This document shows positions 5,932-43,176 of a stretch of DNA of 64,000 bases, piece after piece. Within the stretch, counting starts at the first letter, position 1. Every line of letters starts with the position of its first letter. Position numbers and translations under genes: made by a program. Below the pieces are notes generated by a model that did not search any database, was not told the DNA's origin, and saw only the letters and a list, made by a program, of their open reading frames with translations. The stretch is taken from positions 62,001-126,000 of the IMG/VR virus record IMGVR_UViG_3300043399_000297. One strand, given 5' to 3'.

Positions 5932-5934
5932 ATA

Positions 5935-7212: not shown

Positions 7213-7378
7213 TTGTAGACAGATTCTATTAGTAGAAAAGGTTCGGCAATTTGTTACTGAATACCAACATCACTACAATTTAGATCAAGTATACGGAATA
7301 GATATTGAAGCGTCATTGTTTCTTTTTGTAAAAGAATGTATTAAGGAATATAATGAAGCGAAACCTAATCGCAATTGA
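7193..7378 (+). CDS. Small hypothetical protein (61 aa)
   Basis: AAGGA RBS at about 7183 and ATG at 7193; fills the gap between two radical SAM genes and overlaps both. Confidence 0.55.
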   Translation: MSGHNPNCRQILLVEKVRQFVTEYQHHYNLDQVYGIDIEASLFLFVKECIKEYNEAKPNRN

Positions 7379-14240: not shown

Positions 14241-15425
14241 ATGACTAAAGTAGCAATGATTGGTGTTGGAAAGTTAGGACAAGATTGTGCCGAAATTATG
14301 GCAGAACAATATGATGTAGTGGGATACGATGTTCAACCTCGCTATCCTTCTTTTACTATGTGCAACTCGATTGAAGAAGCAGTAGAAGATAGGGACATTA
14401 TTTTTATTGCAGCTCCTACTCCTCACGACCCTATGTACGGAGGAGAGACACCTACTAGTCATCTTCCCAATAAAGATTTTGATTATACTATCGTAAGTGA
14501 TATTTTGGATGAAGTCAACAAGTATGTTAATCCTAAGCAGCTGGTGGTATTGATTTCTACAGTTTTACCCGGAACAGTTCGCAGTATTCTCCGTCCTAAA
14601 ATCACAAATGCAAGATTTGTTTATAACCCATATCTTATTGCAATGGGTACTATTAAGTGGGATATGGTCAACCCTGAGATGATCATCATTGGAACTGAAG
14701 ATGGTAGTCAAACCGGCGACGCCTTAGAACTAATTCAATTCTACAAGCCATTAATGAAGAACCATCCTAGGATAGAAGTTGGAACTTGGGACGAGGCAGA
14801 ATCAATTAAAATTTTTTATAATACTTTCATTAGCGCGAAAGTATCTATCGTGAATATGATTCAGGATGTAGCCGAACGAAACGGCAATATTAATGTAGAT
14901 GTAGTTACTAATGCGTTAGCTAAATCGTCGTATCGAATTACTGGTCCGGCATATATGACTGCTGGTATGGGTGATGGCGGCGCCTGTCACCCCAGGGATA
15001 ATATTGCTTTGCGTTATATGGCTGACCGCTTGGACTTGGGATATGATCTATTTGATGCTATAATGCGAGCTAGAGAAGTGCAAGCAGAGAATATGGCTAA
15101 AAAGATATTACAGCACGGAAAGAATGTAACAATTATAGGAAAAGCTTATAAGCCAGGAGTACATTATACAAACGGTAGTTCAAGTATGTTGGTCGGCTAT
15201 TATGTAGAGCAATTAGGCGGAAACGTTAATTATTACGATGTTCATACAGGCGATCTTGATCTAGCTGAAGATTGGACAGAAGTATATTTGATCGGTTATT
15301 GGGACAAGTATGTGCAAGACATAGAATTTAAGGCAGAAACCATTGCCACTATCATTGATCCTTGGAGAAAGTATACAAACGACAACTATTCAGGAACAGT
15401 CATTCACTATGGAAATTCTAGATGA
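14241..15425 (+). CDS. ugd: UDP-glucose/GDP-mannose dehydrogenase family protein
   Basis: GVGKLG, AAPTP, STVLPGT, AESIKIFYNTF, GGACHPRD, GKAYKP. Confidence 0.88.
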   Translation: MTKVAMIGVGKLGQDCAEIMAEQYDVVGYDVQPRYPSFTMCNSIEEAVEDRDIIFIAAPTPHDPMYGGETPTSHLPNKDFDYTIVSDILDEVNKYVNPKQLVVLISTVLPGTVRSILRPKITNARFVYNPYLIAMGTIKWDMVNPEMIIIGTEDGSQTGDALELIQFYKPLMKNHPRIEVGTWDEAESIKIFYNTFISAKVSIVNMIQDVAERNGNINVDVVTNALAKSSYRITGPAYMTAGMGDGGACHPRDNIALRYMADRLDLGYDLFDAIMRAREVQAENMAKKILQHGKNVTIIGKAYKPGVHYTNGSSSMLVGYYVEQLGGNVNYYDVHTGDLDLAEDWTEVYLIGYWDKYVQDIEFKAETIATIIDPWRKYTNDNYSGTVIHYGNSR

Positions 15426-24478: not shown

Positions 24479-24566
24479 AAAAATTGTCAACAAGATTAAA
24501 CGAGAGATTACATACCGCAAGCGTGTCAAAGAACTACGCAAAAGAGATCCGTTCATTTACAAATGA
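24462..24566 (+). CDS. 34-aa basic peptide MFKFIKKIVNKIKREITYRKRVKELRKRDPFIYK (not in the ORF track)
   Basis: GGAG RBS upstream; the stop overlaps the carbamoyltransferase start (ATGA); fills the intergenic gap exactly. Confidence 0.75.
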   Translation: MFKFIKKIVNKIKREITYRKRVKELRKRDPFIYK

Positions 24567-26047
24567 GTTATCTAGGCATTAGCTGCGGCTTTCACGATGC
24601 TGCTGTCAGTGTAGTTGACAGTGTTGGCAATATCACCTTCGCCGGACATAGCGAACGTTATAGTAAGAAAAAACACGATGAAAACTTATCTGTTGATCTA
24701 GTCAAAGATGCACTAACGCATTCATATGGCTCTATGGAACTACACTATTATGAGAGACCATACATTAAGGCTATCAGGCAATGGCAAGCTGGACAAGATA
24801 TCGGGCCATTGAACGTTAAAGATATAATTGGCTCAGATGTATTAGATACTCTAAAAATGTATGATAGTAAGATTCATACACACAATCATCATCTTTGTCA
24901 CGCCGCAGCCGGCTTTCAAACAAGCCCATTCAATGATGCTACTGTAGTTGTCATTGATGCGATAGGGGAATTAGATACTATTAGTATTTGGCACGCCACT
25001 TATAATAAGAAAGGTAGAGCGAAGTATAAGAAGCTTTGGGGAAAGAAATATCCTAATTCAATAGGACTAATGTATTCAGCTATGACACAGAGAGTAGGTC
25101 TTAGACCATTAGACGAAGAATACATATTGATGGGTATGGCAGCATATGGCAAACCTAAATATTTTGATTTATTAAATGATACCTTTTTGTCTAATCCTGC
25201 GTATATTGATTTTAGGCAGAACTTGCATACAGGAGTAGATCAAAGTTTCTTGTCCGGTGCAGATGATATGGATATTGCTAGTTCTGCGCAAGCGTTGGCA
25301 GAAGTATTGATTCGAATTGTATTGTTAAAGGCGATGCATCTGGGAAGAAGTAGTAACCTAGTATATAGCGGAGGAGTAGCACTCAACTGTGCAGCCAATA
25401 GATATCTAGGAAGCTATTTCAAAAATATGTGGATTATGCCTAACCCAGGTGATGCAGGCAATAGTCTTGGTGCAGCAGCATTAGGGTACGGTAAGAAATT
25501 AAATTGGACTAATGCATTCTTGGGTTATGAAATCAAAGGCGATTATCCGGTTGACAATCTCATAAAAGAGTTGCATAGTAATAAGATCGTAGGAGTAGCT
25601 AGTGGTAGAGCAGAGTTCGGTCCAAGAGCATTGGGTAATCGTAGTCTGTTAGCAGACCCACGCGGCCCTAATATTAAGGATAAGGTTAATGAGATTAAGC
25701 GAAGACAAAAGTTCAGACCATTTGCGCCGATCGTTTTGGAGGAGTTGGTTACTGATTACTTTGATATGCCTACTGGTTGGACTGACTCTAGGTATATGCA
25801 AGTCGTCGCTATTTGTAGGCATCCTGGTTTATTTCCTGCTATCGTTCACGCTGACGGGACTAGTCGTGTTCAGACTGTTCCTAAAGATGAATCAGGAATC
25901 AGAAAGCTTTTAGAAGTTTGGTACGAACAGACCGGCTGCCCTATGCTTCTTAATACATCACTGAATATTCGCGGTGAACCCATGGTCAACGATAGAAATG
26001 ATGCTGACCGCTTTGAAAAACTCTATGGAGTAAAAGTATATTCATAA
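24563..26047 (+). CDS. O-carbamoyltransferase (NodU/CmcH/TobZ family)
   Basis: HDAA, ERYS, HHLCHA, MGMAAYG, GGVALN, PGDAG, EFGPRALGNRS, FRPFAP, NTSLN. Confidence 0.93.
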   Translation: MSYLGISCGFHDAAVSVVDSVGNITFAGHSERYSKKKHDENLSVDLVKDALTHSYGSMELHYYERPYIKAIRQWQAGQDIGPLNVKDIIGSDVLDTLKMYDSKIHTHNHHLCHAAAGFQTSPFNDATVVVIDAIGELDTISIWHATYNKKGRAKYKKLWGKKYPNSIGLMYSAMTQRVGLRPLDEEYILMGMAAYGKPKYFDLLNDTFLSNPAYIDFRQNLHTGVDQSFLSGADDMDIASSAQALAEVLIRIVLLKAMHLGRSSNLVYSGGVALNCAANRYLGSYFKNMWIMPNPGDAGNSLGAAALGYGKKLNWTNAFLGYEIKGDYPVDNLIKELHSNKIVGVASGRAEFGPRALGNRSLLADPRGPNIKDKVNEIKRRQKFRPFAPIVLEELVTDYFDMPTGWTDSRYMQVVAICRHPGLFPAIVHADGTSRVQTVPKDESGIRKLLEVWYEQTGCPMLLNTSLNIRGEPMVNDRNDADRFEKLYGVKVYS

Positions 26048-26056: not shown

Positions 26057-29000
26057 ATGCTACGTGATGTATTTTACTATGGACAGAAACCAAACGTTCA
26101 TCCGAGAGAACAGTTTGCTAAAGATTTAGAAGATGCTAGGAATAAAGCGACTACTCGTGACTTTTGGATAATCAACGAATTCTGCGATTATCGTAATTTT
26201 AATTGGGATTTCGATTTTGAGTTTCTCCCAGATGAAGATGTATGGGCAGAAGATCATAACAATGTATGGCCTAGCCAACATCAAAAAGATTCAGGAACCT
26301 GGTTATGCCCCAAACAGCATAGTGACTTAATTATATATCGGTGTGATGTTGATCCTATCTGGCGCAAGAACGAAAAGCAAAGTGTTAATTGGGTTGAATT
26401 AGATTTAATTGACCATACTAAGTTTGACTTTAGTTGGCATCCTGATCCTACTGATCCTCCTTATATCTATAAGTGGGGATGCAAATATTATCCTGCTCAA
26501 ATCAAGCACGTATTAGAATATCGTGTTCCGGGCTCAACTCAAGAAAAATTTATGGATATTTCTGCGGAACTTTTGCCTGACTGGGATAAATGGGTAATAC
26601 CTGACAGTATAAATAAATCCGGGTTTGATTTTTCTTGGAGACCCAGTCCTCTTGACCCGCCGCTTATATATGAATTTGGAACGCAATGGCAAAAGGATGG
26701 TGGACCGATTTATGTTGCTAGTGGAGCAACTAAAAGGAAGTATATCAATGATCAAAAAGCTACGAGGATTGCTTCAAACGAAAATTGGACGATTCCTGAC
26801 AATATTGATATTGCTGGATTTGATTTATCATGGCATCCAGATAATATTAGTCCTCCTTATATCTATGTATTTGCTACTCAGTGGGCACTCAGTGGCGGAC
26901 CTGTTTACACAGTTCCTGGCGCAACTGAAATCAAATATGTAGACGCTCAGGTAGCTACTGCACTCCCCGATAAAACAAATTGGATATACAACGAAGAAGA
27001 AATTGACGTTTCTAGTTTTGACTTCAGTTGGCATCCCTTTTCAGGGGACGACCCTTTCATCTATCAGTTTGGTACTCAATGGCAAAAGACTGGAGGTCCG
27101 AAATATATTACTCCGGGCGCGGATGAATCAAGCCCGATCAAGTATGTTGATACTCGTATTATCAAAGCTACTCACCTGCCTGACAAAAACAAGTTCATTG
27201 TATTGGGAAACAATGCTGTTCAGGAGTTTGATTATAGTTGGCATCCAGATGATACAGAAGATCCATATATCTATGTGTTTGGCAATCAATGGCATACAGC
27301 AGAAGTTATGCCAACCATTGAATACAGGATGACTGGCGCAACCCAATACAAGTATATAAATGATACTATTGCTATTCTTGGTCCTAATATGACACATTGG
27401 TTTTACGACTCAAACGAGATAGATGTTTCTGATTTTGATTTTAGTTGGTGTCCTAATCCCGGAGAACCTGAATTAATTTATGAGTTTGCTACTCAGTGGC
27501 AAAAGACTGGTGGTCCTAGATATATTGTGCCGGGTGCTACTGACGTAAAGTATTTAGACTTTCAAAAAGCAAGAGCATTGCCTTCTGAAAAAAATTGGAC
27601 AGTTCCTAGCAATATTGATGCAACGTTGTTTGACTTCAGTTGGCATCCTGATGCGACTAGCCCTCCTTATATCTATGTATTTGCTACTCAGTGGGCACTC
27701 AGTGGCGGACCTATATATACTGTACCGAACGCAACCGAATACAAATATGTCGATGAACAGATAGCTACTGCATTACCTGATATGACCAATTGGGTATATG
27801 ACGAAACAAAGATTGATGTTGAAAGTTTTGACTTCAGTTGGCATCCATATGTTGAAGATCAGCCATATATCTATCAGTTCGGTACACAATGGTGGCCAAC
27901 TGGTGGACCAAAATATATTGCACCGGGGGCAACAAGCGCAAGCCCAGTAAAATACATTGATACACGTATCATTAAAGCTAATACAATACCGGGTCTTGAA
28001 AATTGGGAAATTCCGGACGAGGTAGATAAAAGTAAGTTTGATTTTACTTGGATCCCTCATCCAGAAGACCCTCCCTATATATATGTGTTCGGCAATCAGT
28101 GGTTTAGTGCAGAAAAAATGCCCACTGTAAGATATATTGTTGAAGGTGCAACTGAAATTAAGTATGTTCGCGATATCATTGCTACAATAAAACCAAACAA
28201 AGACAATTGGACAATAGCTAATAATATAGTAGTGAAAGAGTTTGATTTTAGTTGGATACCAGATCCTCATTCTCCTCCTTATATCTATGTGTTCGGTAAT
28301 CAATGGTATTCAGCAGAAGAAATGTCAACTGTAGAATATCACACTCTTGGTGCTACTGAAAGAAAATATATTAATGATATTAGGGTTGTGTTAGACAAAA
28401 ACTTTACGAATTGGGAAATACCAAAAGGAATCGATGTTTCGCGATTTGATTTTAGTTGGATCCCTCATCCTAAAGCACCTCCATATATCTACCAGTTCGG
28501 CACCTTAAAGGATCCGTTGGATGGACCTAGATATATTACTCCAGGCAACAATGGAGAAATAGTTCGTGTACCAAGAATAGAACTTGATGAAATTGAATTT
28601 ATGCCTATCAATAGATATTATATTGAAACTACGTTGGATGACTTGATTATTAAACATCCAGATGAAATGTTCTGGGCGCTGAATAAAGAAATAGATTATT
28701 CTACATTTAACTTTGACTGGACCCCTTCATTGGACCAAGCAGATTATATTCAGGTATTCGGTCAAAGCTCAAGTATAAAAACTCAAACTTATTTGATCAA
28801 TTCTACATTGTGGACTAAAGGGTTGCGAGAGTTTAATTATGTAGAAGAACAAGAGAAAAAGACTGTTTCTGATTTGGATATCTTTTTTGTGGACAAAGGA
28901 AACTCAGAAGCTAATGAAAGATTCCATATACTAAAAAACAAGTTCGGCTCAAAGATTCAAAAGACACGATATCTCAACAGTTGGGTAGACACAATTAATC

Positions 29001-30604
29001 GCTGTATTAATCGTGCTACAAGTAATCTAATTTGGATTCTTAACAGCGAATTAGATTATTCTAACTTTGACTTTACTTATTACCCTAACCCTTGGCAGAT
29101 GAAGATGGTTCACGTATTTGGAACACAACATAGTCATTGGGGAACAACTTTTATGGTCAATCGCGAAACGTTTCCCGAAGATACAAAGTATATTAAAATC
29201 ATTGAACATTTGTCAAATCTAAACTTTGTCAAGGACATTAGAGCCAAAGCAACTGAATGTGTATATGATATTGTCATTATAGACCACAATAATATAGAAA
29301 GCTTATCAGTTACAGAAACGATGAAAAGAGTTTGGGCTCCTAATAGGAATGTTACTACTATAAAATATGAGGATAGTTATCTAAACACAATTCGTAACTA
29401 TGTAAAGAAGTTACCTGACAAAAAAGAACATTATCTTTGGATTTGCTCAAGCGTATGCGACTATACTAACTTTGACTTTAGTTATATATGTGATCCCTTT
29501 GCTAAAGATAATCTACACGTATTTCCCAGCAATAATCAAAAGTTTGGGGACACGTTCTTGTTGGATGTAAACAAGACTAAAGAAATCATAGATGATCTAG
29601 AAAAACTTGAAGATTATAATAAGGTGAGCTATAACAGTGCTACGAAGGCGAATAGATTGTTGCCACCAATCATCGTCACAGAAAATGATACGCATACCAA
29701 TTCATTAGAAACTATTACAGGATTTCCTTATGCAAGACTGATTACTAAGGACAACTTGAATGTTGAAGTTCCTGAGATTGAACCTATGAATCTATGGTCA
29801 CCTGAAACTAAGAACATTCAGGTACTAAGCACCGGTGCAACTCATATTGTAGCTCCTATAGAAATTAAAGATTATGTCAAGAAAGAACTATACGAATATC
29901 CATATATTAAACGCGCTCCAAAGTTAGCATTGTCTAATCCTATTGATATCGTGTTCTTGAGCAACGGTGAAATTGGTGCAGAAGAAAACTATGAACATCT
30001 ATTGAATATCACTAAGAACTTGAAGAACCGTGTAGTGAGAGTAGATGGGGTGAACGGTCGTGTTGCAGCATATCATAAAGCAGCAGAAGCTAGCGAAACG
30101 CCGTGGTTCTTCACGGTGTTTGCTAAGTTGAAGGTTAGTCCCAAATTTGATTTTAACTGGCAACCTGACAGAATGCAAATCCCCAAGCACTACATCTTCC
30201 ACGCAAAGAATCCTGTCAATGGGTTGACATATGGTCACCAGGCAATGATTGCATACAACAAAAAGCTTACTCTTGCTAATGAGGGATATGGACTAGACTT
30301 TACATTAGATGACGAACACGAGGTTGTGCCACTTATCTCTGGTACCGCACATTATAATACAGATGAATTTTCTACTTGGAGAACAGCATTTAGAGAGGTA
30401 ATCAAGCTTAAAGCAGACATTAGTGATATAGCCAAAGATAGACTTGATGTATGGTTGAATAAAGCAGAAGGTGACTTTGCTCAATATAGCATTAAGGGTG
30501 CATTGGATGCTGATGAATATTATGATGAAGTCAATGGCGAGTTTGACAAACTCAAGCTAAGCTATGAATGGGATTGGCTACGCAAAAAGTTTGGGGAAAT
30601 GTGA
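26057..30604 (+). CDS. 1515-aa protein with tandem FDFSWxP/PYIY repeats and degenerate GT-A-like domains
   Basis: 11 internal repeats of about 65 aa; C-terminal domain homologous to ORF 1703 (DIVFLS, RVDGVNG, WRTAFREVIK). Confidence 0.75.
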   Translation: MLRDVFYYGQKPNVHPREQFAKDLEDARNKATTRDFWIINEFCDYRNFNWDFDFEFLPDEDVWAEDHNNVWPSQHQKDSGTWLCPKQHSDLIIYRCDVDPIWRKNEKQSVNWVELDLIDHTKFDFSWHPDPTDPPYIYKWGCKYYPAQIKHVLEYRVPGSTQEKFMDISAELLPDWDKWVIPDSINKSGFDFSWRPSPLDPPLIYEFGTQWQKDGGPIYVASGATKRKYINDQKATRIASNENWTIPDNIDIAGFDLSWHPDNISPPYIYVFATQWALSGGPVYTVPGATEIKYVDAQVATALPDKTNWIYNEEEIDVSSFDFSWHPFSGDDPFIYQFGTQWQKTGGPKYITPGADESSPIKYVDTRIIKATHLPDKNKFIVLGNNAVQEFDYSWHPDDTEDPYIYVFGNQWHTAEVMPTIEYRMTGATQYKYINDTIAILGPNMTHWFYDSNEIDVSDFDFSWCPNPGEPELIYEFATQWQKTGGPRYIVPGATDVKYLDFQKARALPSEKNWTVPSNIDATLFDFSWHPDATSPPYIYVFATQWALSGGPIYTVPNATEYKYVDEQIATALPDMTNWVYDETKIDVESFDFSWHPYVEDQPYIYQFGTQWWPTGGPKYIAPGATSASPVKYIDTRIIKANTIPGLENWEIPDEVDKSKFDFTWIPHPEDPPYIYVFGNQWFSAEKMPTVRYIVEGATEIKYVRDIIATIKPNKDNWTIANNIVVKEFDFSWIPDPHSPPYIYVFGNQWYSAEEMSTVEYHTLGATERKYINDIRVVLDKNFTNWEIPKGIDVSRFDFSWIPHPKAPPYIYQFGTLKDPLDGPRYITPGNNGEIVRVPRIELDEIEFMPINRYYIETTLDDLIIKHPDEMFWALNKEIDYSTFNFDWTPSLDQADYIQVFGQSSSIKTQTYLINSTLWTKGLREFNYVEEQEKKTVSDLDIFFVDKGNSEANERFHILKNKFGSKIQKTRYLNSWVDTINRCINRATSNLIWILNSELDYSNFDFTYYPNPWQMKMVHVFGTQHSHWGTTFMVNRETFPEDTKYIKIIEHLSNLNFVKDIRAKATECVYDIVIIDHNNIESLSVTETMKRVWAPNRNVTTIKYEDSYLNTIRNYVKKLPDKKEHYLWICSSVCDYTNFDFSYICDPFAKDNLHVFPSNNQKFGDTFLLDVNKTKEIIDDLEKLEDYNKVSYNSATKANRLLPPIIVTENDTHTNSLETITGFPYARLITKDNLNVEVPEIEPMNLWSPETKNIQVLSTGATHIVAPIEIKDYVKKELYEYPYIKRAPKLALSNPIDIVFLSNGEIGAEENYEHLLNITKNLKNRVVRVDGVNGRVAAYHKAAEASETPWFFTVFAKLKVSPKFDFNWQPDRMQIPKHYIFHAKNPVNGLTYGHQAMIAYNKKLTLANEGYGLDFTLDDEHEVVPLISGTAHYNTDEFSTWRTAFREVIKLKADISDIAKDRLDVWLNKAEGDFAQYSIKGALDADEYYDEVNGEFDKLKLSYEWDWLRKKFGEM
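26385..28560 (+). repeat. Coding tandem repeat array (11 units of about 200 bp) with an 810-bp higher-order duplication
   Basis: Unit is NW...ID...FDFSWxP...PYIYxFGxQW...Y..PGAT..KY; 51 bp are identical at 26852-26902 and 27662-27712. Confidence 0.85.
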
Positions 30605-30613
30605 TTATTTCAC

Positions 30614-30642
30614 TTGACAATATGGTATAAGATAAGTATATT
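30614..30642 (+). promoter_or_regulatory. sigma70-type promoter
   Basis: TTGACA-17-TATATT. Confidence 0.7.
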
Positions 30643-30677
30643 AGAACATAGTTCAATTTATCTTGAAGGATATTAAA

Positions 30678-31055
30678 ATGAAGAAGATTGTGTCAGCTAT
30701 TGCCCTCGCTACAGTGCTTTTTTCTAGCACTGCTGCTCTTGCAGACGGTCGCGATTATCGCTGGGGAGTAGACAGCAATCGTCATAGCCCATATTACGGT
30801 AGAAATTATGATCGTGGATATGATCGCAATTATGATAGGCATCGTGATGGTGGTGTAAGCACAGGAGGTGCTGTTGCAATTGGGCTTGGGGCATTGATCG
30901 TTGGTGCATTGATTGCTAATGGTAATAGGAATAATCGCAACACCTATCAGGATCAGCAGCAGTATTATCAGCCACAGCAGGTTTGTGAAGATATCATCAA
31001 GTATGACTATTACAATAACCCCTATGTTGCTGGTAGAAATTGCTGGTATAGATAA
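30678..31055 (+). CDS. Secreted/membrane protein with signal peptide and glycine-zipper helix
   Basis: MKKIVSAIALATVLFSSTAALA signal, RxYD repeats, GGAVAIGLGALIVGALIA. Confidence 0.65.
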   Translation: MKKIVSAIALATVLFSSTAALADGRDYRWGVDSNRHSPYYGRNYDRGYDRNYDRHRDGGVSTGGAVAIGLGALIVGALIANGNRNNRNTYQDQQQYYQPQQVCEDIIKYDYYNNPYVAGRNCWYR

Positions 31056-31058
31056 AGA

Positions 31059-31087
31059 TTGACATTTATATCACATTGTGATATATA
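31059..31087 (+). promoter_or_regulatory. sigma70 promoter of the tmRNA with a palindromic spacer
   Basis: TTGACA-17-TATATA, containing TATATCACA-T-TGTGATATA. Confidence 0.75.
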
Positions 31088-31093
31088 AAGTTA

Positions 31094-31446
31094 TCAGTTG
31101 TTGATACAATCTGATGTTTGTGCAGGACCCGGGGGCGGTACCCGGCAGGTCCACCATCAACCTTGTCACTGTAGCTAGTGAAAGCTGACTAGTGAAAAAG
31201 GATAAACCTGTCGAAGGAGGATAAGCTCTCCGGGGGACGGGGGAATGGCCCGCTCGACATGCGGGAGGACAAGGTTGTTGATGGGCCTGAAACAGGATCG
31301 ACTGCAAGGCGGAGGTGAGAGTAGACTGATTGGTTGGTCGCATATAGACCAAAATAAACAACTGCAAATGATAATGACTTTGCATTTGAATTGGCTCTAG
31401 CAGCCTGATTCATTGGGTATGGCTCCACCCCGAAACAGAACGGGCC
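31094..31446 (+). ncRNA. ssrA: Circularly permuted two-piece tmRNA (alphaproteobacterial type)
   Basis: Acceptor piece ends GGACCCGGG-GGCGGTA-CCCGGCAGGTCCACCA (31156). Coding piece starts GGGCCTG (31283), giving a 7-bp acceptor stem with a G3.U70 pair. Tag ORF 31364-31408 reads ANDNDFAFELALAA*. Outer ends are approximate. Confidence 0.93.
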
Positions 31447-31470
31447 TCTTTCCATACAGATAAATACAGT

Positions 31471-33999
31471 ATGGACATTTCAGAACTCGCCAATTTCAAT
31501 TTAAGTGATGCAGTATCTTTTCACGAGGAACTAAACCCACAGCTTTGGGAAGACCACAAATTAGACAGAGAAGTTCGTGATCAGTTATTGTTGATTGCAG
31601 AAGACTTTGTAGAATATCTTGGTATTGGTACACTTAAAGTAAAAGATGTTACTATCAGTGGTAGTAACGCTGCATATTCATATACTCCCCACAGTGATTT
31701 AGATTTGCATATCATAGTAGATTTTAATGATCTACCTAACGATCCAGTGTACCAAGAACTATTCACTGCTAAAAAAACAATATATAATGAAATGCACGAT
31801 ATAACGGTTCATAGTGTTCCTGTAGAATTATATGTGCAAGATATTAATCAACCTGTGCAGTCATTGGGTGAATATAGTATTGTTCACAACAAGTGGATTC
31901 GTATTCCTAAAAAGCGTAGAGCTAACTTTGACGAAGTTGCTACTAAAGCCAAATATGATAAACTAGCTGACTTGATTGAACTTACATTGAAGTCAAAAGA
32001 CTATAATAAAGTGAAAAATACACTTGATTTGCTCAAGCGTTATCGTAAAGCTGGGTTGGAAAAAGAAGGTGAGTTTGGTCCTGAAAATCTCGCATACAAG
32101 GCTCTTAGGAAGCAAGGTGCTGTAAAAGATTTGTTTGATCTTAAAGCTAGGCTTCACGCTGAACGGTTGAGTATTGAAGAAGATTCAAAATTACTTGACA
32201 AGCCGGAAATGACTATAGCACAGTTAGCAGAGAAGCACGGTGTATCTCGTATGGAAATTGCAACGCAGTTGGACAAAGGCATTAAGGTTGAACTTGAACA
32301 CACTAGTCATAAAAATGTAGCTCGTGAGATTGCATTAGACCATATTGCTGAGGATCCAAAATACTATGATAAATTATCTAAGGCTGAGTTGGAAGAAGAG
32401 ATTGTAGATGAAACCGCAGAAGAAAATCAAATAATTAGCTTGATAGCTAAACACGCGGCTGATAATATCGTAGACATAATGCAAGTTAAAGAAAATGCAT
32501 TTTTATCATTTATACAAGCAGGTATGACTCCCAAACACAATCTTACAGTGTTTGGTGTCAAAATCAAAGATTTAGGTATTCCTAAAGTCAAGGATCCCAC
32601 ATTAGCAAAATTGTTAAAAACTATGGAAATCAAGGTTAAAACTTCTAAAAATTGGGAAAATGATGAGGGTATAAAAACGCACGGTAGTTATTATCCCGGA
32701 GAAAATTATATTGAACTTTATTTTCCGGCTCACGAGTTCACTGCTAAAAAAAGAGATTCATCATTGCAAGTAGAAATAGCAGACACACTTGCTCACGAAA
32801 TACAACACGCATTGGATGACTTTAAAAGTAAAGGAAACGCATTTAAAGATTTAGCATCTTATTCAGGTGGTAAAGATTATGAATCATACTTAAAACTTCC
32901 ATATGAAGTAAATGCTAGATTCCAGCAAGCAACTATGGATATAGCAAAGTATATAGCTACACCGAAAAAAGATGGATCAAGAACTACACAAAAAGATTTG
33001 CCCGAATTGATTAGATATGCGTTTGAGAAAAATCAATTAAACAATATATATAGAAAGAACCAAGCAGAATATAAGCGATTACTCACTAGAGCATATAAAT
33101 TTTTTCAAGCAGAATTAAATGCTCCCAAGAAAGCAACGCCTCAGAATATAGTAAGTAGGGCAGTCAATTGGATATTAGGAAAGCCTACTACACAGGTTAA
33201 GGAAGCATCAGGATATATCCCCAGAAAAAAAGAAAATAACTATTTAGGCTGGGAATTCACAAAACCAAAACCTGATTATTGGATGATGCAAGAAGCGGTT
33301 GAAGAATATTACAAGAAAGATGGTAAATGGTTTCCCCACAGAACACACGGAATTCATCAATTGGTCACTAGACAGGAATTACGTGAATCTATGCAAGATG
33401 AAGTCAAAGAATTCTGGAACCAAATGATTCGTTTAGACGGTCGTAAAGAAGTAAAATTAAAGCCCGGTAGTTCAGTTAGTGTCATACAATGTTGGTCTCA
33501 TCCTTATGATTCTATATTTGAGTTGAGGGGCAACTTAAACCCTAAAAAAATAGCAGATGTATATTATGAGGATGGAGGATCAATCAGTTATATACAATTT
33601 GAAGACGGATCAACATTCCCGGACAAATCATTTCTAGACCGAGGACAAGGCGGAGAATTGGATGGTATCATAACTACTTTCTTTCCGTCTAAGCAAGCAG
33701 CCGAACATATGTTGACTGCTTTACGGTTAGTTGTTCCTGCTGGATGGAAATTAAGCACCGCTAACTTAAACGAATCTTCGTTGAATGAAGCCTCGGGATA
33801 TATTCCAAGTAAAAAAGAAAAGAACGACCCTCGCTTCAAGACTGCCCTCACTGTAGATGTAAAGCCAGACAGCATCAAAAAGAATGCTAATGCGTTCAAC
33901 TGGAAAACATCGCGGGCCGGCATTCCTCCCCAGGCTAGATCAGATGGCAAACTAGCAGAAGATTTGATGAAAGAGTTTAAAAACTTTTTGGGTAAGTAA
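31471..33999 (+). CDS. Modular protein: Pol-beta-type nucleotidyltransferase, small helical domain, HExxH zincin-like domain and unknown modules
   Basis: ISGSNAAYSYTPHSDLDLH..VELYVQD; GIKVELEHT..IALDHIAEDPKYYDKL; LAHEIQHALD..EVNARF; duplicated EASGYIP. Confidence 0.7.
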   Translation: MDISELANFNLSDAVSFHEELNPQLWEDHKLDREVRDQLLLIAEDFVEYLGIGTLKVKDVTISGSNAAYSYTPHSDLDLHIIVDFNDLPNDPVYQELFTAKKTIYNEMHDITVHSVPVELYVQDINQPVQSLGEYSIVHNKWIRIPKKRRANFDEVATKAKYDKLADLIELTLKSKDYNKVKNTLDLLKRYRKAGLEKEGEFGPENLAYKALRKQGAVKDLFDLKARLHAERLSIEEDSKLLDKPEMTIAQLAEKHGVSRMEIATQLDKGIKVELEHTSHKNVAREIALDHIAEDPKYYDKLSKAELEEEIVDETAEENQIISLIAKHAADNIVDIMQVKENAFLSFIQAGMTPKHNLTVFGVKIKDLGIPKVKDPTLAKLLKTMEIKVKTSKNWENDEGIKTHGSYYPGENYIELYFPAHEFTAKKRDSSLQVEIADTLAHEIQHALDDFKSKGNAFKDLASYSGGKDYESYLKLPYEVNARFQQATMDIAKYIATPKKDGSRTTQKDLPELIRYAFEKNQLNNIYRKNQAEYKRLLTRAYKFFQAELNAPKKATPQNIVSRAVNWILGKPTTQVKEASGYIPRKKENNYLGWEFTKPKPDYWMMQEAVEEYYKKDGKWFPHRTHGIHQLVTRQELRESMQDEVKEFWNQMIRLDGRKEVKLKPGSSVSVIQCWSHPYDSIFELRGNLNPKKIADVYYEDGGSISYIQFEDGSTFPDKSFLDRGQGGELDGIITTFFPSKQAAEHMLTALRLVVPAGWKLSTANLNESSLNEASGYIPSKKEKNDPRFKTALTVDVKPDSIKKNANAFNWKTSRAGIPPQARSDGKLAEDLMKEFKNFLGK

Positions 34000-34660: not shown

Positions 34661-35761
34661 ATGTCTCAAATGTCTGATACCCTCACTGTTACTTCGATCC
34701 AGGCGCGCAAGGCTATTCTTGCTGCTTTCAAGGCAAAGCGTCCTGTCTTCCTCTGGGGCCCTCCGGGCATCGGTAAGTCGGAAGTCGTTCAGGAAATTAC
34801 TGAGGAACTCGGTGGTTATATGGTCGATCTGCGTATGGCGCAGATGGAACCCACTGATATTCGTGGTATCCCCTACTACAACAAGGACCTCGGCAAGATG
34901 GATTGGGCCGAGCCCGTCGATCTTCCCAGCGCAGAACTTGCTGCTGAATACCCCATCGTTGTTCTCTTCCTTGACGAAATGAACTCTGCTCCCCCGGCTG
35001 TTCAGGCTGCTGGTTATCAGCTTATTCTGAACCGTCGTGTTGGTAAGTATAAGCTGCCCGATAATGTTGTTATCGTTGCTGCTGGTAACCGTGACAGCGA
35101 CAAGGGCGTTACTTATCGTATGCCGATGCCGCTTGCTAATCGTTTCGTTCACCTTGAAATGCGTCCCGACTTCAATGCTTGGCAGCAGTGGGCTGTTCAC
35201 AAGGCTGTTCACAAGGACATTGTTGGTTATCTCTCGTTCGCTAAGCAGGATATGTATGACTTTGATGCAAAGTCTTCTTCTCGTGCTTTTGCTACCCCGC
35301 GTTCGTGGGTGTTCGTGAGCGACCTGCTCGTTGACGAGGACAATGTTGACAACGATACACTGTTCAATCTTGTTGCAGGTTCTGTCGGTGACGGTCTTGC
35401 TACTAAGTTTATGGCACATCGTCGTGTTGCTGGTCAGATGCCTGAGCCGATCGACATTCTCGACGGTAAGGTAAAGGACCTCAAGGTCAAGGAAATCTCT
35501 GCGATGTACTCGCTCACGATTTCTATGTGCTACGAACTCAAGGACGCACTTGATAACAAGCGTGTTGACAACAAGCAGTTCCACGTGATGGCTGACAATT
35601 TCTTCGAATACATCATGAAGAACTTCGAAACTGAACTGGTTGTGATGGGTGCGAAGATTGCGCTCAAGACTTATCGTCTGCCGATTGAGCCCTCGCAGCT
35701 TTCTAATTTTGACGAGTTCCACAAGAAGTACAGTAAGTATATCGTGGAAGCTGGCAACTAA
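34661..35761 (+). CDS. MoxR-type AAA+ ATPase
   Basis: GPPGIGKS, LFLDEMN, AAGN, LANRF, TPRSW. Confidence 0.9.
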   Translation: MSQMSDTLTVTSIQARKAILAAFKAKRPVFLWGPPGIGKSEVVQEITEELGGYMVDLRMAQMEPTDIRGIPYYNKDLGKMDWAEPVDLPSAELAAEYPIVVLFLDEMNSAPPAVQAAGYQLILNRRVGKYKLPDNVVIVAAGNRDSDKGVTYRMPMPLANRFVHLEMRPDFNAWQQWAVHKAVHKDIVGYLSFAKQDMYDFDAKSSSRAFATPRSWVFVSDLLVDEDNVDNDTLFNLVAGSVGDGLATKFMAHRRVAGQMPEPIDILDGKVKDLKVKEISAMYSLTISMCYELKDALDNKRVDNKQFHVMADNFFEYIMKNFETELVVMGAKIALKTYRLPIEPSQLSNFDEFHKKYSKYIVEAGN

Positions 35762-35774
35762 GCTAGCGGCTCCT

Positions 35775-35809
35775 GGGGAGAGGTTCGAGACAGCCTCTCC
35801 CCTTTTTTT
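35775..35809 (+). terminator. Rho-independent terminator
   Basis: GGGGAGAGGT..GCCTCTCCCC followed by T7. Confidence 0.85.
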
Positions 35810-35812
35810 CGG

Positions 35813-35841
35813 TTGACATTCCCTTCAAGGTTTGTTATATT
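35813..35841 (+). promoter_or_regulatory. Early sigma70 promoter
   Basis: CGGTTGACA-17-TATATT. Confidence 0.75.
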
Positions 35842-35866
35842 GTCTCTATAAAGCAAGGAGATTTTT

Positions 35867-37177
35867 ATGAGTCAAGTTATTCCCGGTACTGCGACTAAGC
35901 CCAAGAAGGGTAAGCGCACTCGCAGCCAAAAGTTTGAAAATCTGATCGGTCCGACTGATCCTAAGATTGACCACGAAGCTCGTGAACGTCTGATCACTGC
36001 TCGTATTGGTCTCCTTCTTCGTCATAGCTTTTTCGGCAACCTCGCTACTCGTCTCCAGCTTGTAAATGCTGACGAGTGGTGCTCCACTGCTGCTACTGAC
36101 GGTCTTCGTTTTTATTACAACAGTCGTTTTATCAAGATGCTTAAGACTAAGGAGGTTGAATTCCTCGTTGGTCACGAAGTGCTTCACGTAGTCTACGATC
36201 ACCTTGGTCGTCGTGACAGTCGTGATCCTGAAATCTGGAACATCGCTAACGACTATGCTGTTAACGCTGACCTTAAGCGTCACAAGGTCGGTGAAATGAT
36301 CACTACTGTTCCTGCTCTCTTTGAGCCTAAGTATGATGGTAAGGCTTCTGAGGAAATCTATGATGACCTTATGAAGAATGTCAAGTATATTGACATTGAT
36401 GAACTCCTTGACAAGATGCTTGACGATCACCTTGAAGACGAGGGTCAGGGTATGGGTGATGAAGACGGTGATGAAAATGGTCAGAAGGGTAATGGCAAGC
36501 GTCCTAAGATGAGTCCTGAGGAGCGTGAGCGCGCCCGTCAGGAGATGAAGCAGGCTATCATCAATGCTGCACAGAGTGCCGAAGCTGGTTCTATCCCGGC
36601 TGGCGTTCAGCGTATGATCAAGCAGCTTACTGATCCTGTTATGCCCTGGCGTGAACTGATCCAGACGAACCTTACTTCGTCTATCAAGAGCGATTACACT
36701 TGGATGCGTCCTTCTCGTCGTTCTTGGCATATGGATGCTGTTATGCCCGGTATGAACCCGGGTGAAGAAATCGATGTTGATATCTATATCGATATGTCGG
36801 GTTCTATCTCTAACAAGCAGGGTATGGCATTTCTTTCGGAAGTCGCCGGTATGATGGAAGCGTTCGATGGTTATTCGCTTCGTGTCACTTGCTTTGATAC
36901 TCGCTGCTATAACACACAGGAGTATACTAGCGAGAATATGGAGAATATCGAGGAGTATGAGCTTGCAGGTGGCGGCGGTACTGACTTCGACTGCATCTTT
37001 GACGACCTTAAGGAAGCAGGACGTGTCCCGGTTCGCTTGATCGTATTCACTGACGGTTATCCTTGCGGTAGCTGGGGTGATGAGGATTACTGTGATACGA
37101 CTTGGATCATTCACGGTGATCCCAATCCGAACCCGCCCTTCGGTACGTATGCTATCTATGACGACCACAGAAAGTAA
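35867..37177 (+). CDS. Metallopeptidase-like plus VWA domain protein (DUF2201-type), partner of MoxR
   Basis: TAATDG, HEVLH, WNIANDYAVN, DMSGS (MIDAS), GGGGTDF, FTDG. Confidence 0.88.
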   Translation: MSQVIPGTATKPKKGKRTRSQKFENLIGPTDPKIDHEARERLITARIGLLLRHSFFGNLATRLQLVNADEWCSTAATDGLRFYYNSRFIKMLKTKEVEFLVGHEVLHVVYDHLGRRDSRDPEIWNIANDYAVNADLKRHKVGEMITTVPALFEPKYDGKASEEIYDDLMKNVKYIDIDELLDKMLDDHLEDEGQGMGDEDGDENGQKGNGKRPKMSPEERERARQEMKQAIINAAQSAEAGSIPAGVQRMIKQLTDPVMPWRELIQTNLTSSIKSDYTWMRPSRRSWHMDAVMPGMNPGEEIDVDIYIDMSGSISNKQGMAFLSEVAGMMEAFDGYSLRVTCFDTRCYNTQEYTSENMENIEEYELAGGGGTDFDCIFDDLKEAGRVPVRLIVFTDGYPCGSWGDEDYCDTTWIIHGDPNPNPPFGTYAIYDDHRK

Positions 37178-41204: not shown

Positions 41205-42167
41205 ATGCGCATACTCGTAACCGGCGGTCTGGGTTTTATAGGACATAATGTTGTATCTCAGCTAGAAGAATTAAAGCACGAAGTTACAATAGTTGATAAC
41301 TTTACTGATTATGGAATCATTCCTAGTGAAGAATTGAATGCTCTAATGCTTGAGAGGCAGAAAGAGATTTATTCTGTAAACTATGTCTATGACATTGCAG
41401 AACCTGCATTAGAAGCTGCATTTATGGCAAATAGACCAGAGATTGTAATCCATCTTGCTAGCTTCCCTAGGCAGAAAGTAGTGAACAGTAATCCTGTATT
41501 AGCTGCCGACACGATGATGAAGGGCCTGCTAAACGTATGTGAACTAAGTTGTGAATATAAGGTTAAGAAGTTTGTCTATATCAGTAGCAGTATGGTCTAT
41601 GGTAATTATATAGAAGGTACAGATGAATATTCCTTCTGCAAACCGCAAGGACAATATGCTATTATGAAACTTGCAGGAGAACATCTTGTGAGAGATTATG
41701 GGCATAAGGGCTGTTTTGATTACACTATTCTCAGGCCTAGTGCAGTTTATGGTCCTCGTGATGTTGAGGATCGTGTTATCTCAAAGTTCTTTATGGCGGC
41801 GATGCGTGATGAAGACCTAGTAGTAAAAGGCAAAGATGAGAAGCTTGACTTCACATATGTAACAGACACCGCCTCAGGCATCGTGCAAGCGGCCCTCAGC
41901 GACAATACAGTATACAGAACATACAATATCACGCGAGGAAAAGCATTCACCTTGTTAGAAGCAGCAGAACTAGTGACTAAGATTGTTGGAAAGGGTCACA
42001 TCAAGATAACTTACCGAGATGAGGATTATCCGAGCAGGGGTGCGTTAAATATTAATGCTGCCAAACGAGATTTTAATTTTGATCCCAAGATAGACCTTGA
42101 AGAGGGTTTAAATAGATATTATGAATACTTACAAAATTCCCCACTTTGGTCTCAAAAGACAGTATAA
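41205..42167 (+). CDS. NAD-dependent nucleotide-sugar epimerase/dehydratase
   Basis: TGGLGFIG, HLAS, SSSMVYG, YAIMK, VYGP. Confidence 0.92.
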   Translation: MRILVTGGLGFIGHNVVSQLEELKHEVTIVDNFTDYGIIPSEELNALMLERQKEIYSVNYVYDIAEPALEAAFMANRPEIVIHLASFPRQKVVNSNPVLAADTMMKGLLNVCELSCEYKVKKFVYISSSMVYGNYIEGTDEYSFCKPQGQYAIMKLAGEHLVRDYGHKGCFDYTILRPSAVYGPRDVEDRVISKFFMAAMRDEDLVVKGKDEKLDFTYVTDTASGIVQAALSDNTVYRTYNITRGKAFTLLEAAELVTKIVGKGHIKITYRDEDYPSRGALNINAAKRDFNFDPKIDLEEGLNRYYEYLQNSPLWSQKTV

Positions 42168-43176
42168 AAATCTAAAAAGTGAATTACTAGAGGCAACCGA
42201 CTTAGCTATTAGGGACGGTATACTTGTTGATGGGCCATATAGTAAGAAATTCAATGAATGGTTGTGTAAAAAGACTGGGGCAACATATGCAGTATTAGTG
42301 CATTCCGGCACTCAGGCACTAGAACTGATAGCACTATATTGGTATATTATAGCAAAAAATTATGATATTGAAACACCTACAATCAATATCCCGAACTTAA
42401 CTTATGTAGCTACATTCAATGCCTTTCACAAGGTGGGATTCAATATCAATTTAGTTGATACAGACAAGAACGGCATATTTAAAATAGATACCTGTCCTCC
42501 CTCTGATTTTGATTGTTATGTGGGTTTATATGGCGCACATCCGCTTAAACATACCAAGAATGTTATAGTAGACGGTGCCCAACATTGGTTAGTAGCTGAA
42601 ACAATTGGTGAAGCAATGGCAATTAGTTTTGACCCTACTAAAAATCTTAATGCTACTGGTAACGGTGGAGCTATAGTAACTAACAACAAATATTTATTTG
42701 ACTTTGTAACCGAAACAAGAAACAATGGTAACCCTAATAATAATGTCTGGGGAACGAATTCAAAATTAAGTGAACTAGATTGTAGTCATCTATTAGTGAG
42801 AACAAAATATATTGACAGTTGGCAAAAAAGACGCAGAGAGATTAGAGACTTCTACATAGATCAGTTTAACGACTTACCAATCAGATGTTTGAGTAAGGGT
42901 ATTCAAACTCACAGTGATCAAAAGTTTGTAGTCTATAGTGATAACCGAAATGGGTTGAAAGCACATTTAGAAAAGAACTCAATTGAAACCAAAATTCATT
43001 ATGAACTTGCACTAAGTGAATTACCAATAGCTAAGATAAATGTATCAGTCAAGCCAGACTTGATGAGTAATAGTATCTTGTTATCTAGGGGAGTATTAAG
43101 CTTGCCTATATATCCAGAACTAACCGACAACGAAGTTGAATATATAGCAAGTAAAGTTAAGGATTTCCATAACTAG
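42121..43176 (+). CDS. DegT/DnrJ/EryC1/StrS aminotransferase
   Basis: SGTQALEL, DGAQ, SFDPTKNL, GNGGA, NSKLSE, LSLPIYP. Confidence 0.9.
   Translation: MNTYKIPHFGLKRQYKNLKSELLEATDLAIRDGILVDGPYSKKFNEWLCKKTGATYAVLVHSGTQALELIALYWYIIAKNYDIETPTINIPNLTYVATFNAFHKVGFNINLVDTDKNGIFKIDTCPPSDFDCYVGLYGAHPLKHTKNVIVDGAQHWLVAETIGEAMAISFDPTKNLNATGNGGAIVTNNKYLFDFVTETRNNGNPNNNVWGTNSKLSELDCSHLLVRTKYIDSWQKRRREIRDFYIDQFNDLPIRCLSKGIQTHSDQKFVVYSDNRNGLKAHLEKNSIETKIHYELALSELPIAKINVSVKPDLMSNSILLSRGVLSLPIYPELTDNEVEYIASKVKDFHN

What the first reader, a model, noticed from the sequence alone, without database searches (positions are those of the whole stretch)
31094..31446. Phage-encoded permuted two-piece tmRNA pointing to an alphaproteobacterial host
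Seen: the acceptor piece precedes the coding piece, with a G3.U70 pair, encoded CCA, a GGCGGTA T-loop and tag ANDNDFAFELALAA. Known: permuted genes with a GGCRGUA T-loop and ANDN..AA tags are characteristic of Alphaproteobacteria. Inference: the phage supplies its own ribosome rescue, perhaps replacing cleaved host tmRNA. No smpB is present in this window.
Basis: partly seen in the sequence, partly recalled or inferred. Interest (0 to 1): 0.6.

Follow-up and report, generated by a model that had tools for sequence, protein, structure and literature searches.

The report
Phage-borne two-piece tmRNA gene
A freshwater jumbo phage carries a complete, evolutionarily conserved two-piece (circularly permuted) tmRNA gene of the alphaproteobacterial type but no SmpB; this kind of gene is already known in phages, and by itself it does not prove an alphaproteobacterial host.

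Summary
ARAGORN and two Rfam models (RF04321 93.5 bits, RF01849 83.2 bits) call a permuted tmRNA at 31093-31449. Gene order, G3.U70, encoded CCA, GGCGGUA T-loop and tag ANDNDFAFELALAA are all as described. The window lies in a 244-kb freshwater IMG/VR jumbo-phage record related to PA5oct, Atu_ph07 and Phosso. Related phages hold the gene in the same slot. Compensatory changes there preserve the acceptor stem, T stem, P2, tag-end hairpin and 3' pseudoknot, so the gene is under selection. SmpB is absent from this record and from five relatives, one rated complete, so host SmpB is presumably used. Phage two-piece tmRNAs are already published (Melnitz, pelagimyophages, huge phages): this is a new member of a known kind. 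The host inference is only partly supported. The OM43 phage Melnitz carries an alpha-type gene. Sister phages (TerL 83-84% identical) carry a beta-type permuted tmRNA in the same slot. No sampled bacterium has a close full-length match; the nearest is Sinorhizobium phage Phosso. The spacer between the pieces (126 nt here) is longer than in any sampled bacterial gene, and in relatives it is absent, replaced, or holds small ORFs.

The parts
31059..31064 (+). -35-like hexamer TTGACA of the putative early (sigma-70-type) promoter of the tmRNA gene
   Evidence: Read from the sequence. TTGACA is kept at the same distance upstream in relatives L012, L060 and L363 while the spacer sequence differs. 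The consensus scanner did not list it, because the -10 hexamer ends in A. Its function is inferred.
31082..31087 (+). -10-like hexamer TATATA, 17 nt after the -35. The spacer holds a perfect 8+8 palindrome, ATATCACA-t-TGTGATAT, at 31068-31084.
   Evidence: The palindrome occurs once in the 244-kb record. Relatives have TATATAAATA here. The inferred transcription start is near 31093, where RF04321 begins.
31093..31156 (+). Acceptor piece (about 64 nt). It comprises the P2 5' strands (AUCAG 31093-31097), T stem CCGGG 31129-31133 / CCCGG 31141-31145, T-loop GGCGGUA 31134-31140, acceptor 3' strand CAGGUCC 31146-31152, discriminator A 31153 and CCA 31154-31156.
   Evidence: Covariance-model alignment and ARAGORN 3' tRNA domain. 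Covariation in relatives: T-stem pair 1 is C-G or G-C; P2 outer pair 3 is C-G or U-A.
31157..31282 (+). Intervening segment (IVS, 126 nt), expected to be excised. It is closed by a 10-bp stem (31159-31168 with 31269-31278) and contains three internal hairpins. It has no ATG-initiated ORF.
   Evidence: Fold: -42.9 kcal/mol for 31161-31285, z -2.65. In the full precursor fold the closing stem stacks on the acceptor stem, z -2.91. It is unique in the genome and in IMG/VR. No Rfam family matched, no tRNA was found, and similarity to other IVSs does not exceed shuffles. It is longer than all 135 sampled bacterial IVSs, whose maximum is 88 nt.
31283..31449 (+). Coding piece (about 167 nt). It comprises the acceptor 5' strand GGGCCUG 31283-31289, a D-loop analogue, P2 3' strands (CUGAU 31326-31330), hairpin 31334-31352, the tag frame and a 3' pseudoknot at 31415-31446.
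   Evidence: The acceptor stem takes four compensated forms in the clade, with G3.U70 invariant. Pseudoknot stem 2 occurs in seven different fully complementary versions. The 3' end is taken from the end of the RF01849 match and is not mapped experimentally.
31364..31408 (+). Tag reading frame: resume codon GCA 31364-31366, 14 codons encoding ANDNDFAFELALAA, stop TGA 31406-31408. A tag-end hairpin pairs GGCU 31393-31396 with AGCC 31402-31405.
   Evidence: ARAGORN. In relatives the final Ala codons differ only at third positions, and those positions pair with each other in the hairpin as G-C, C-G or U-A. This exact tag is found in no other IMG/VR contig.
31460..31466 (+). ATAAATA, a T4-late-promoter-like motif 4 nt before the ATG of the next gene (31471-33999). 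It marks the downstream limit of the tmRNA unit.
   Evidence: Invariant in alignment A1. The same motif lies 4-8 nt before the ATG of the genes starting at 43193, 49620 and 54520. Its function is inferred.

Best explanation
This is a functional ssrA gene of the circularly permuted (two-piece) alphaproteobacterial type, carried by a lytic freshwater jumbo phage.

Proposed mechanism, with the basis for each step:
1. Host RNA polymerase transcribes a precursor of about 360 nt from a sigma-70-like promoter, starting near 31093 (inferred).
2. The downstream GGGCCUG pairs with the upstream CAGGUCC to form the tRNA-like domain (shown by sequence and covariation).
3. Host RNase P cuts before G31283, and host 3' processing trims back to CCA31156, releasing the 126-nt intervening segment. 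This yields an acceptor RNA of about 64 nt and a coding RNA of about 167 nt, held together by the acceptor and P2 helices (inferred from the Caulobacter paradigm).
4. Host AlaRS charges the RNA through G3.U70 and discriminator A (inferred; the identity elements are present and invariant).
5. With host SmpB and EF-Tu, the RNA enters stalled ribosomes. Translation resumes on GCA31364 and adds ANDNDFAFELALAA. The ALAA end is expected to target the product to host ClpXP-type proteases (inferred).

The likely benefit is to keep ribosomes free and recycle amino acids while infection damages or truncates mRNAs. The gene appears to be inherited within this phage lineage rather than freshly captured from a host.
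For: Two programs and two covariance models score the gene well above threshold. All tRNA-like identity elements are present. The gene sits in the same slot, between orthologues of the 1515-aa and 842-aa genes, in related phages. Compensatory changes are seen in the acceptor stem (pairs 4-6 each have 2-3 Watson-Crick types), T stem, P2, the pre-resume hairpin, the tag-end hairpin and both pseudoknot stems, while G3.U70 is invariant. Third-codon-position changes in the last Ala codons keep both the coding and the pairing. The -35 hexamer is conserved across relatives although the spacers differ. No integrase is present, so this is not an att-site fragment. SmpB is absent here and in five relatives, including a record rated complete, so the RNA depends on host SmpB. 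The nearest tmRNA outside the clade is that of the cultured Sinorhizobium jumbo phage Phosso. Published precedent exists for phage tmRNAs, including two-piece ones (PMC9004378; PMC7162821; PMC4131195).
Against: There is no expression, processing or aminoacylation evidence. No RNA run holds this phage; only contigs from its likely source sample were available. The promoter is a consensus match that the scanner did not list, and no intrinsic terminator was found. The tag is unique to this phage, so its coding constraint is inferred from relatives that carry a different tag. Compatibility with the unknown host's SmpB is assumed. The biological benefit is inferred. The record is only 71% complete, so an smpB in the missing part cannot be formally excluded for this phage itself.
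Confidence: 0.8

Rival explanations
1. The host is not an alphaproteobacterium. The alpha-type gene is a lineage heirloom, or was acquired horizontally, and works well enough with any proteobacterial SmpB, AlaRS and ribosome. On this view it says nothing about the present host.
For: The OM43 phage Melnitz has an alpha-type two-piece ssrA (PMC9004378). Sister phages with TerL 83-84% identical carry a beta-type permuted tmRNA in the same slot. No full-length bacterial match was found in 401 alphaproteobacterial species or by the 26-mer scan. The best outside match is a phage gene.
Against: The cultured relative Phosso has an alpha-type gene and infects Sinorhizobium, an alphaproteobacterium. The alpha/beta split inside the clade could equally mean that the gene type follows the host class. 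The ANDN start of the tag is the alphaproteobacterial norm.
Confidence: 0.4
2. The phage tmRNA acts chiefly as a substitute for host tmRNA that is cleaved or depleted during infection, by a phage nuclease or by a host defence system.
For: There is none specific. It is compatible with an early-type promoter and with dependence on host SmpB.
Against: No nuclease or defence link was seen next to the gene. The idea is a special case of the main explanation and adds an untested step.
Confidence: 0.1
3. The RNA is a decoy or modulator. It titrates host SmpB, or re-tags host proteins with a phage-specific tag, to inhibit or redirect host trans-translation rather than to rescue ribosomes for the phage.
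For: A tRNA-like-domain-only tmRNA in mycobacteriophage DS6A is discussed as an inhibitor that may titrate SmpB (PMC4131195). Tags differ sharply between close relatives.
Against: The full coding piece, the resume context, the canonical ALAA end and the pseudoknots are all conserved with covariation. A simple decoy would not need them.
Confidence: 0.08
4. It is host DNA without function: an assembly chimera, or an ssrA fragment carried as an attachment site of a temperate phage.
For: Temperate elements often integrate into ssrA and carry fragments of it (PMC4131195; PMC9004378).
Against: Both pieces are complete. Phage genes lie on both sides. The same slot is occupied in many independent contigs. 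One contig from the source runs spans the locus without differences. No integrase is present.
Confidence: 0.02

Closest known systems
Caulobacter-type two-piece tmRNA of Alphaproteobacteria (Rfam RF01849 alpha_tmRNA; permuted form RF04321)
   Same: The gene order is the same: acceptor piece, intervening segment, coding piece. It shares the GGCRGUA T-loop, G3.U70, encoded CCA, an ANDN...AA tag, the P2 helices and a 3' pseudoknot with the AACAGAA loop. It scores above both gathering thresholds.
   Different: It is carried by a phage without smpB. Its IVS is 126 nt, against a median of 27-28 nt and a maximum of 88 nt in 135 sampled bacterial genes. Similarity to 401 sampled alphaproteobacterial species is limited to the T-arm and acceptor region. 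The tag is unique.
Two-piece ssrA of marine myophages (Methylophilales phage Melnitz, Pelagibacter phages HTVC008M and Mosig; Buchholz et al. 2022, PMC9004378)
   Same: These are phage-encoded, alpha-type, permuted genes placed behind an early-type promoter, with no phage smpB reported. They are aquatic. That paper counted 53 two-piece genes among 133 unique phage tmRNAs.
   Different: The phage lineage differs: this is a PA5oct/Atu_ph07/Phosso-like jumbo phage from fresh water. No glutamine riboswitch is present here. No sequence match was found in the phage collection by blastn.
tmRNA of Sinorhizobium jumbo phages (Phosso, PV764938.1, 349596-350198; a tmRNA is also reported for AP-J-162, PMC11242549)
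   Same: They belong to the same broad jumbo-phage group (TerL 50% identical) and carry an alpha-type permuted gene with a GGCGGUA T-loop and an ANDN tag. The 3' pseudoknot is very similar. This is the best non-clade match to the window gene.
   Different: The Phosso IVS is about 405 nt. The gene is not annotated in the record, and ARAGORN misses it. Its tag is ANDNVSTKVALAA. Its genomic neighbourhood differs.
One-piece tmRNAs of mycobacteriophages (Bxz1 group), Bacillus phage G and metagenomic huge phages (PMC4131195; PMC7162821)
   Same: These are also phage-borne ssrA genes thought to sustain translation.
   Different: They are the standard, unpermuted gene form. Some huge phages also encode SmpB, which this phage does not.

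Membership tests
Permuted (two-piece) tmRNA, alphaproteobacterial type (RF04321 / RF01849) | Covariance-model score at or above the curated gathering score | tested here: met
   RF04321 scores 93.5 bits against 47; RF01849 scores 83.2 bits against 50. The search of the whole record gives the same result.
Permuted (two-piece) tmRNA, alphaproteobacterial type (RF04321 / RF01849) | Circular permutation: the 3' tRNA-like half with CCA lies upstream of the 5' half and the tag frame | tested here: met
   ARAGORN reports 'Permuted', with the 3' domain at gene positions 55-93 and the 5' domain at 220-246.
Permuted (two-piece) tmRNA, alphaproteobacterial type (RF04321 / RF01849) | tRNA-Ala-like acceptor: a 7-bp stem with G3.U70, discriminator A and CCA | tested here: met
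   GGGCCUG pairs with CAGGUCC, followed by A and CCA. Four compensated stem versions occur in relatives, and G3.U70 is invariant.
Permuted (two-piece) tmRNA, alphaproteobacterial type (RF04321 / RF01849) | Alpha-specific T-loop GGCRGUA | tested here: met
   GGCGGUA lies at 31134-31140. The T-arm/acceptor pattern hits at least 120 bacterial contigs, and nearly all of those listed are Alphaproteobacteria.
Permuted (two-piece) tmRNA, alphaproteobacterial type (RF04321 / RF01849) | Tag reading frame that starts at an Ala resume codon and ends in a hydrophobic ...AA degron plus a stop | tested here: met
   The frame encodes ANDNDFAFELALAA*. In relatives the last Ala codons change only at third positions.
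Permuted (two-piece) tmRNA, alphaproteobacterial type (RF04321 / RF01849) | Conserved helices and pseudoknot supported by covariation | tested here: met
   Covariation is seen in P2 outer, the T stem, the pre-resume hairpin, the tag-end hairpin and the 3' pseudoknot, whose stem 2 takes 7 different complementary versions.
Permuted (two-piece) tmRNA, alphaproteobacterial type (RF04321 / RF01849) | Processing into two RNAs; alanylation; SmpB-dependent trans-translation | not testable with these tools
   No RNA runs hold this phage. Only contigs could be laid on the locus.
Self-sufficient phage trans-translation module (tmRNA plus SmpB, as in some huge phages) | smpB encoded by the same genome | tested here: not met
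   PF01668 has no match in the 244-kb record or in five relatives, one rated 100% complete.
Melnitz-type phage ssrA with glutamine riboswitch | glnA/glutamine riboswitch motif within the ssrA gene | tested here: not met
   An Rfam search of 30600-31900 at E up to 1 returned only the tmRNA models and one sub-threshold snoRNA hit.
ssrA fragment as attachment site of a temperate element | Partial ssrA 3' end next to an integrase | tested here: not met
   The gene is complete. PF00589 has no match in the record.

The most novel reading that the evidence does not exclude
The gap created by the permutation, between the CCA and the 5' GGG, is a cargo slot in phage tmRNA genes. It sits behind a strong promoter and is bounded by two tRNA-type processing sites, so whatever lies there is released as a by-product of tmRNA maturation. 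On this reading the window's orphan 126-nt stem-closed element is such a cargo RNA with a function of its own. Relatives carry other structured RNAs there, or Shine-Dalgarno-led mini-ORFs. In some the SD is buried in the closing stem. Some ORFs lack a stop before the RNase P site, recalling the non-stop regulation of arfA. A second strand of the same reading is that alpha-type and beta-type genes replace each other in one phage slot, so the tmRNA type is exchanged to fit the host class.
Probability: 0.3. Interest if true: 0.65.

Novelty: new member of a known kind. Interest (0 to 1): 0.4.

Why it matters
Phage-encoded tmRNAs show that some phages invest in keeping the host's ribosomes working. 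This case adds a large, abundant freshwater jumbo-phage clade, with more than 600 TerL relatives in IMG/VR. In that clade the gene is conserved, depends on host SmpB and comes in two types. This gives a natural test of whether tmRNA type follows host class, and so whether such genes can serve as host markers. The cargo-like spacer, if real, would be a new way for phages to express small RNAs and peptides through tRNA-processing enzymes.

Tried and rejected
- blastn of the gene and of 16 kb around it against 50,697 phage records gave no match.
- A clade-specific 26-mer had 0 hits in 185,579 species genomes.
- BLAST against 401 alphaproteobacterial species matched only the T-arm/acceptor region (query positions 41-80), so no host could be assigned. 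One of those genomes, G045, is unpublished; the negative result does not rest on it.
- 'relatives' and 'of' are not available for a virus record or a locus.
- Riboswitch or ribozyme in the IVS: no Rfam family matched at E up to 1, and none matched in the relatives' IVSs at E up to 0.01.
- tRNA in the IVS: none in the window, even at relaxed ARAGORN settings.
- IVS as a repeat or mobile element: there is no second copy in the genome, none in IMG/VR, and no similarity to other IVSs beyond shuffles.
- The same tag elsewhere: none.
- Expression: no RNA runs hold the phage, and the DNA runs are probably the source sample.
- Phage-encoded partners: no SmpB, ClpP, RF-1/ArfB-type domain, CCA-adding enzyme or integrase.
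- IVS mini-ORFs of relatives: no Pfam or PHROG family matched, ArfA included.
- Functional link to the flanking genes: the 130-aa ORF has no family; the 842-aa protein has only sub-threshold nucleotidyltransferase and zincin hits plus DUF5661.
- GC content as a host clue was rejected, because Atu_ph07 has 37% GC on a high-GC host.
- The original two-piece tmRNA papers (PMC16621, PMC516066) are not held. Statements about Caulobacter processing rest on general knowledge and on their citation in PMC9004378.
- No complex prediction or structure prediction was run.

Full report
**Observation**

ARAGORN finds one permuted tmRNA in the window, at 31064-31499 on the + strand, with tag ANDNDFAFELALAA. 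Rfam gives two hits above the curated thresholds:
- RF04321 tmRNA_permuted: 93.5 bits (gathering 47) at 31093-31408.
- RF01849 alpha_tmRNA: 83.2 bits (gathering 50) at 31055-31449.

- T stem CCGGG/CCCGG around T-loop GGCGGUA (31134-31140).
- Acceptor 3' strand CAGGUCC (31146-31152), discriminator A, then encoded CCA (31154-31156).
- A 126-nt spacer (31157-31282).
- The 5' strand GGGCCUG (31283-31289), which gives G3.U70.
- Resume codon GCA at 31364 and stop TGA at 31406-31408.

**Context**

- The window is positions 62001-126000 of a 244,022-bp linear IMG/VR virus record. CheckV rates it 71% complete, and its GC content is 38.8%.
- It encodes a T4-type large terminase, virion proteins, UvsX, SSB, a helicase, thymidylate synthase and many sugar and radical-SAM enzymes, almost all on one strand.
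- The nearest cultured terminases, at about 50% identity, belong to PA5oct-like Pseudomonas jumbo phages, Sinorhizobium phage Phosso and Agrobacterium phage Atu_ph07.
- More than 600 IMG/VR contigs encode relatives of this terminase; the best 80 are 82-90% identical.
- The only sequencing runs that hold the locus are freshwater metagenomes, which are probably the source sample. None is RNA.
- The whole record has one tRNA (Phe) and this tmRNA.
- It has no SmpB, ClpP, RF-1/ArfB-type domain, CCA-adding enzyme or tyrosine integrase.

**Is the gene functional?**

The comparative evidence is strong.
- A clade-specific pattern and neighbour-gene searches recovered the same gene in 17 or more related contigs.
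- In the alpha-type relatives that hold both flanks, it lies between the orthologues of the 1515-aa and 842-aa genes.
- The acceptor stem occurs as GGGCCUG/CAGGUCC, GGGGGCG/CGCCUCC, GGGGAUG/CAUCUCC and GGGGGUG/CACCUCC. G1-C72, G2-C71 and G3.U70 never change.
- The T stem, the outer P2 helix, the hairpin before the resume codon and the tag-end hairpin each show compensated pairs.
- Stem 2 of the 3' pseudoknot appears in seven different, fully complementary versions. The three apparent mismatches come from one row, L012, that MAFFT shifted by two columns.
- In relatives the last Ala codons vary only at third positions, and those positions pair with each other, so both coding and structure are kept.
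- A TTGACA hexamer at a fixed distance upstream is conserved although the spacers differ. The consensus scanner did not list this promoter, and it found no terminator.
- The next gene has its own ATAAATA late-type motif 4 nt before its ATG. That motif recurs before other genes.

**Mechanism**

Shown: a complete, selected, alpha-type permuted ssrA gene in a phage without smpB.

Inferred from established tmRNA biology:
1. Early transcription by host RNA polymerase.
2. Folding of the tRNA-like domain across the spacer.
3. RNase P cleavage before G31283, and 3' trimming back to the CCA.
4. Alanylation through G3.U70.
5. Entry into stalled ribosomes with host SmpB and EF-Tu.
6. Tagging with a peptide ending in ALAA, for host proteolysis.

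Five relatives also lack SmpB, one of them a 524-kb record rated complete. Dependence on host SmpB therefore looks like a trait of the clade. It is not explained by the missing 29% of this record.

**Host inference**

The T-arm/acceptor pattern is almost exclusive to Alphaproteobacteria among bacterial genomes. The gene type is therefore alphaproteobacterial in origin.

Three results weaken the step from gene type to host:
- Melnitz, an OM43 phage, has an alpha-type two-piece ssrA (PMC9004378).
- Inside this phage clade (TerL 83-84% identical), contigs G405, G406 and G420 carry a beta-type permuted tmRNA above the RF01850 threshold. G413 and G414 have it as their best clan hit, below threshold. 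In all five, the gene lies downstream of the orthologue of the same 1515-aa gene.
- No bacterial genome has a close full-length match, and the best outside match is the tmRNA of Sinorhizobium phage Phosso.

The alpha/beta split can be read in two ways: the type follows the host class, or the type is irrelevant to the host. The data cannot decide. GC content is no guide in this group, because Atu_ph07 has 37% GC.

**The spacer (IVS)**

Here it is 126 nt, closed by a 10-bp stem, folded (z -2.65 alone, -2.91 in the precursor), without an ORF and without any relative.

Comparison of lengths:
- 135 sampled bacterial alpha-type genes: median 27 nt, maximum 88 nt.
- 64 IMG/VR genes: median 70 nt, maximum 207 nt.
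- Mann-Whitney p = 1.4e-9 on unique sequences.

Within the clade the spacer takes several forms:
- 5-9 nt.
- About 120 nt, in at least four mutually dissimilar versions.
- 295 nt with an 88-aa ORF.

L060 and L363 are 98-99% identical on both sides, yet their spacers are 9 and 127 nt.

Across viral contigs, 6 of 26 long spacers hold an SD-led ORF that fills most of the spacer. The reverse strand has none, and shuffles average 0.3. Two homologous copies differ mostly by synonymous changes. Three ORFs have no stop before the RNase P site. None matches a known family.

This suggests a cargo slot. That is a lead, not a finding about the window itself.

**Comparison and novelty**

- Phage tmRNAs have been known since the Bxz1-type mycobacteriophages and phage G (PMC4131195).
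- Huge phages carry tmRNA and sometimes SmpB (PMC7162821).
- Two-piece forms were counted in 53 of 133 unique phage tmRNAs and described in Melnitz and the pelagimyophages (PMC9004378).
- The 2025 tmRNA database lists 79 phage sequences (PMC11915505).

The window's gene passes every testable membership criterion for the alpha-type permuted family. It is therefore a new member of a known kind. Its distinguishing features are a unique tag, an orphan long spacer and a jumbo-phage lineage in which it had not been described.

**Limits**

- All functional steps are inferred.
- The host is unknown.
- The bacterial comparison is a sample of 401 species.
- The original Caulobacter papers could not be read here.

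Noticed in passing
Loci L374 (1450-1808), L375 (1433-1835), L381 (1431-1859), L383, L384: Phages of the same clade (TerL 83-84% identical) carry a beta-type permuted tmRNA. RF01850 scores 112, 95 and 104 bits above threshold in three loci, and 79 and 70 bits below it in two. The tags include ANDELFALAA, ANDSQFSIAA and ANDSQFALAA. The gene sits in the slot downstream of the orthologue of the window's 1515-aa gene. L374, L375 and L381 use the same acceptor stem as the window.
   Followed up: partly
Loci L060/L363, L012, L361, L372, L015; also L017, L037, L099, L058, L066, L076, L122: The spacer between the two tmRNA pieces is a presence/absence and replacement hot spot: 9 versus 127 nt in genes that are 98-99% identical. 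In many viral contigs it holds an SD-led mini-ORF of 20-88 aa. This is significantly more than on the reverse strand or in shuffles. Some SDs lie in the closing stem, and three ORFs lack a stop before the RNase P site.
   Followed up: partly
L378 1501-2103 (-), which is PV764938.1 349596-350198: The cultured Sinorhizobium phage Phosso has an alpha-type permuted tmRNA (RF04321 113 bits, RF01849 108 bits; tag ANDNVSTKVALAA) with a spacer of about 405 nt. It is not annotated in the record, and ARAGORN misses it.
   Followed up: yes
window 31068-31084: A perfect 8+8 palindrome, ATATCACA-t-TGTGATAT, fills the spacer of the putative tmRNA promoter and occurs only once in the 244-kb record. It looks like an operator. 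Relatives do not share it.
   Followed up: partly
window 31460, 43178, 49608, 54507 (also 43937, 51424): ATAAATA, which is T4-late-promoter-like, lies only 4-8 nt before the ATG of several genes, including a virion protein gene. This suggests leaderless or very short-leader late mRNAs.
   Followed up: partly
window 31471-33999: The conserved downstream 842-aa protein has a GS...DxD nucleotidyltransferase-like N-terminus (sub-threshold hits to NTP_transf_2, SidM_N and Polbeta), DUF5661 and an HEIQH zincin-like motif. It looks like a multi-domain 'polyvalent' phage protein behind a late-type motif.
   Followed up: partly
window 34661-37177: A MoxR-like AAA ATPase is followed by a DUF2201 metallopeptidase/VWA protein, in a stretch of raised GC (0.44-0.46). 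Each has a long antisense ORF of nearly the same length.
   Followed up: no
window 3257-8312, 14241-15425, 24563-26047, 41205-43176: There are four consecutive radical-SAM genes plus UDP-glucose dehydrogenase, carbamoyltransferase, a sugar epimerase and an aminotransferase. This is a large sugar or cofactor modification gene set for a phage.
   Followed up: no
window 26057-30604: A 1515-aa ORF directly upstream of the tmRNA slot has no Pfam or PHROG hit. It is nonetheless conserved (53-87% identity over its C-terminal part) in all relatives examined, and it marks the slot.
   Followed up: partly
genome record G000:C1 34946-35027 (-), outside the window: The only tRNA in 244 kb is an 82-nt tRNA-Phe(GAA). 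This is unusually few tRNAs for a jumbo phage of this group.
   Followed up: no
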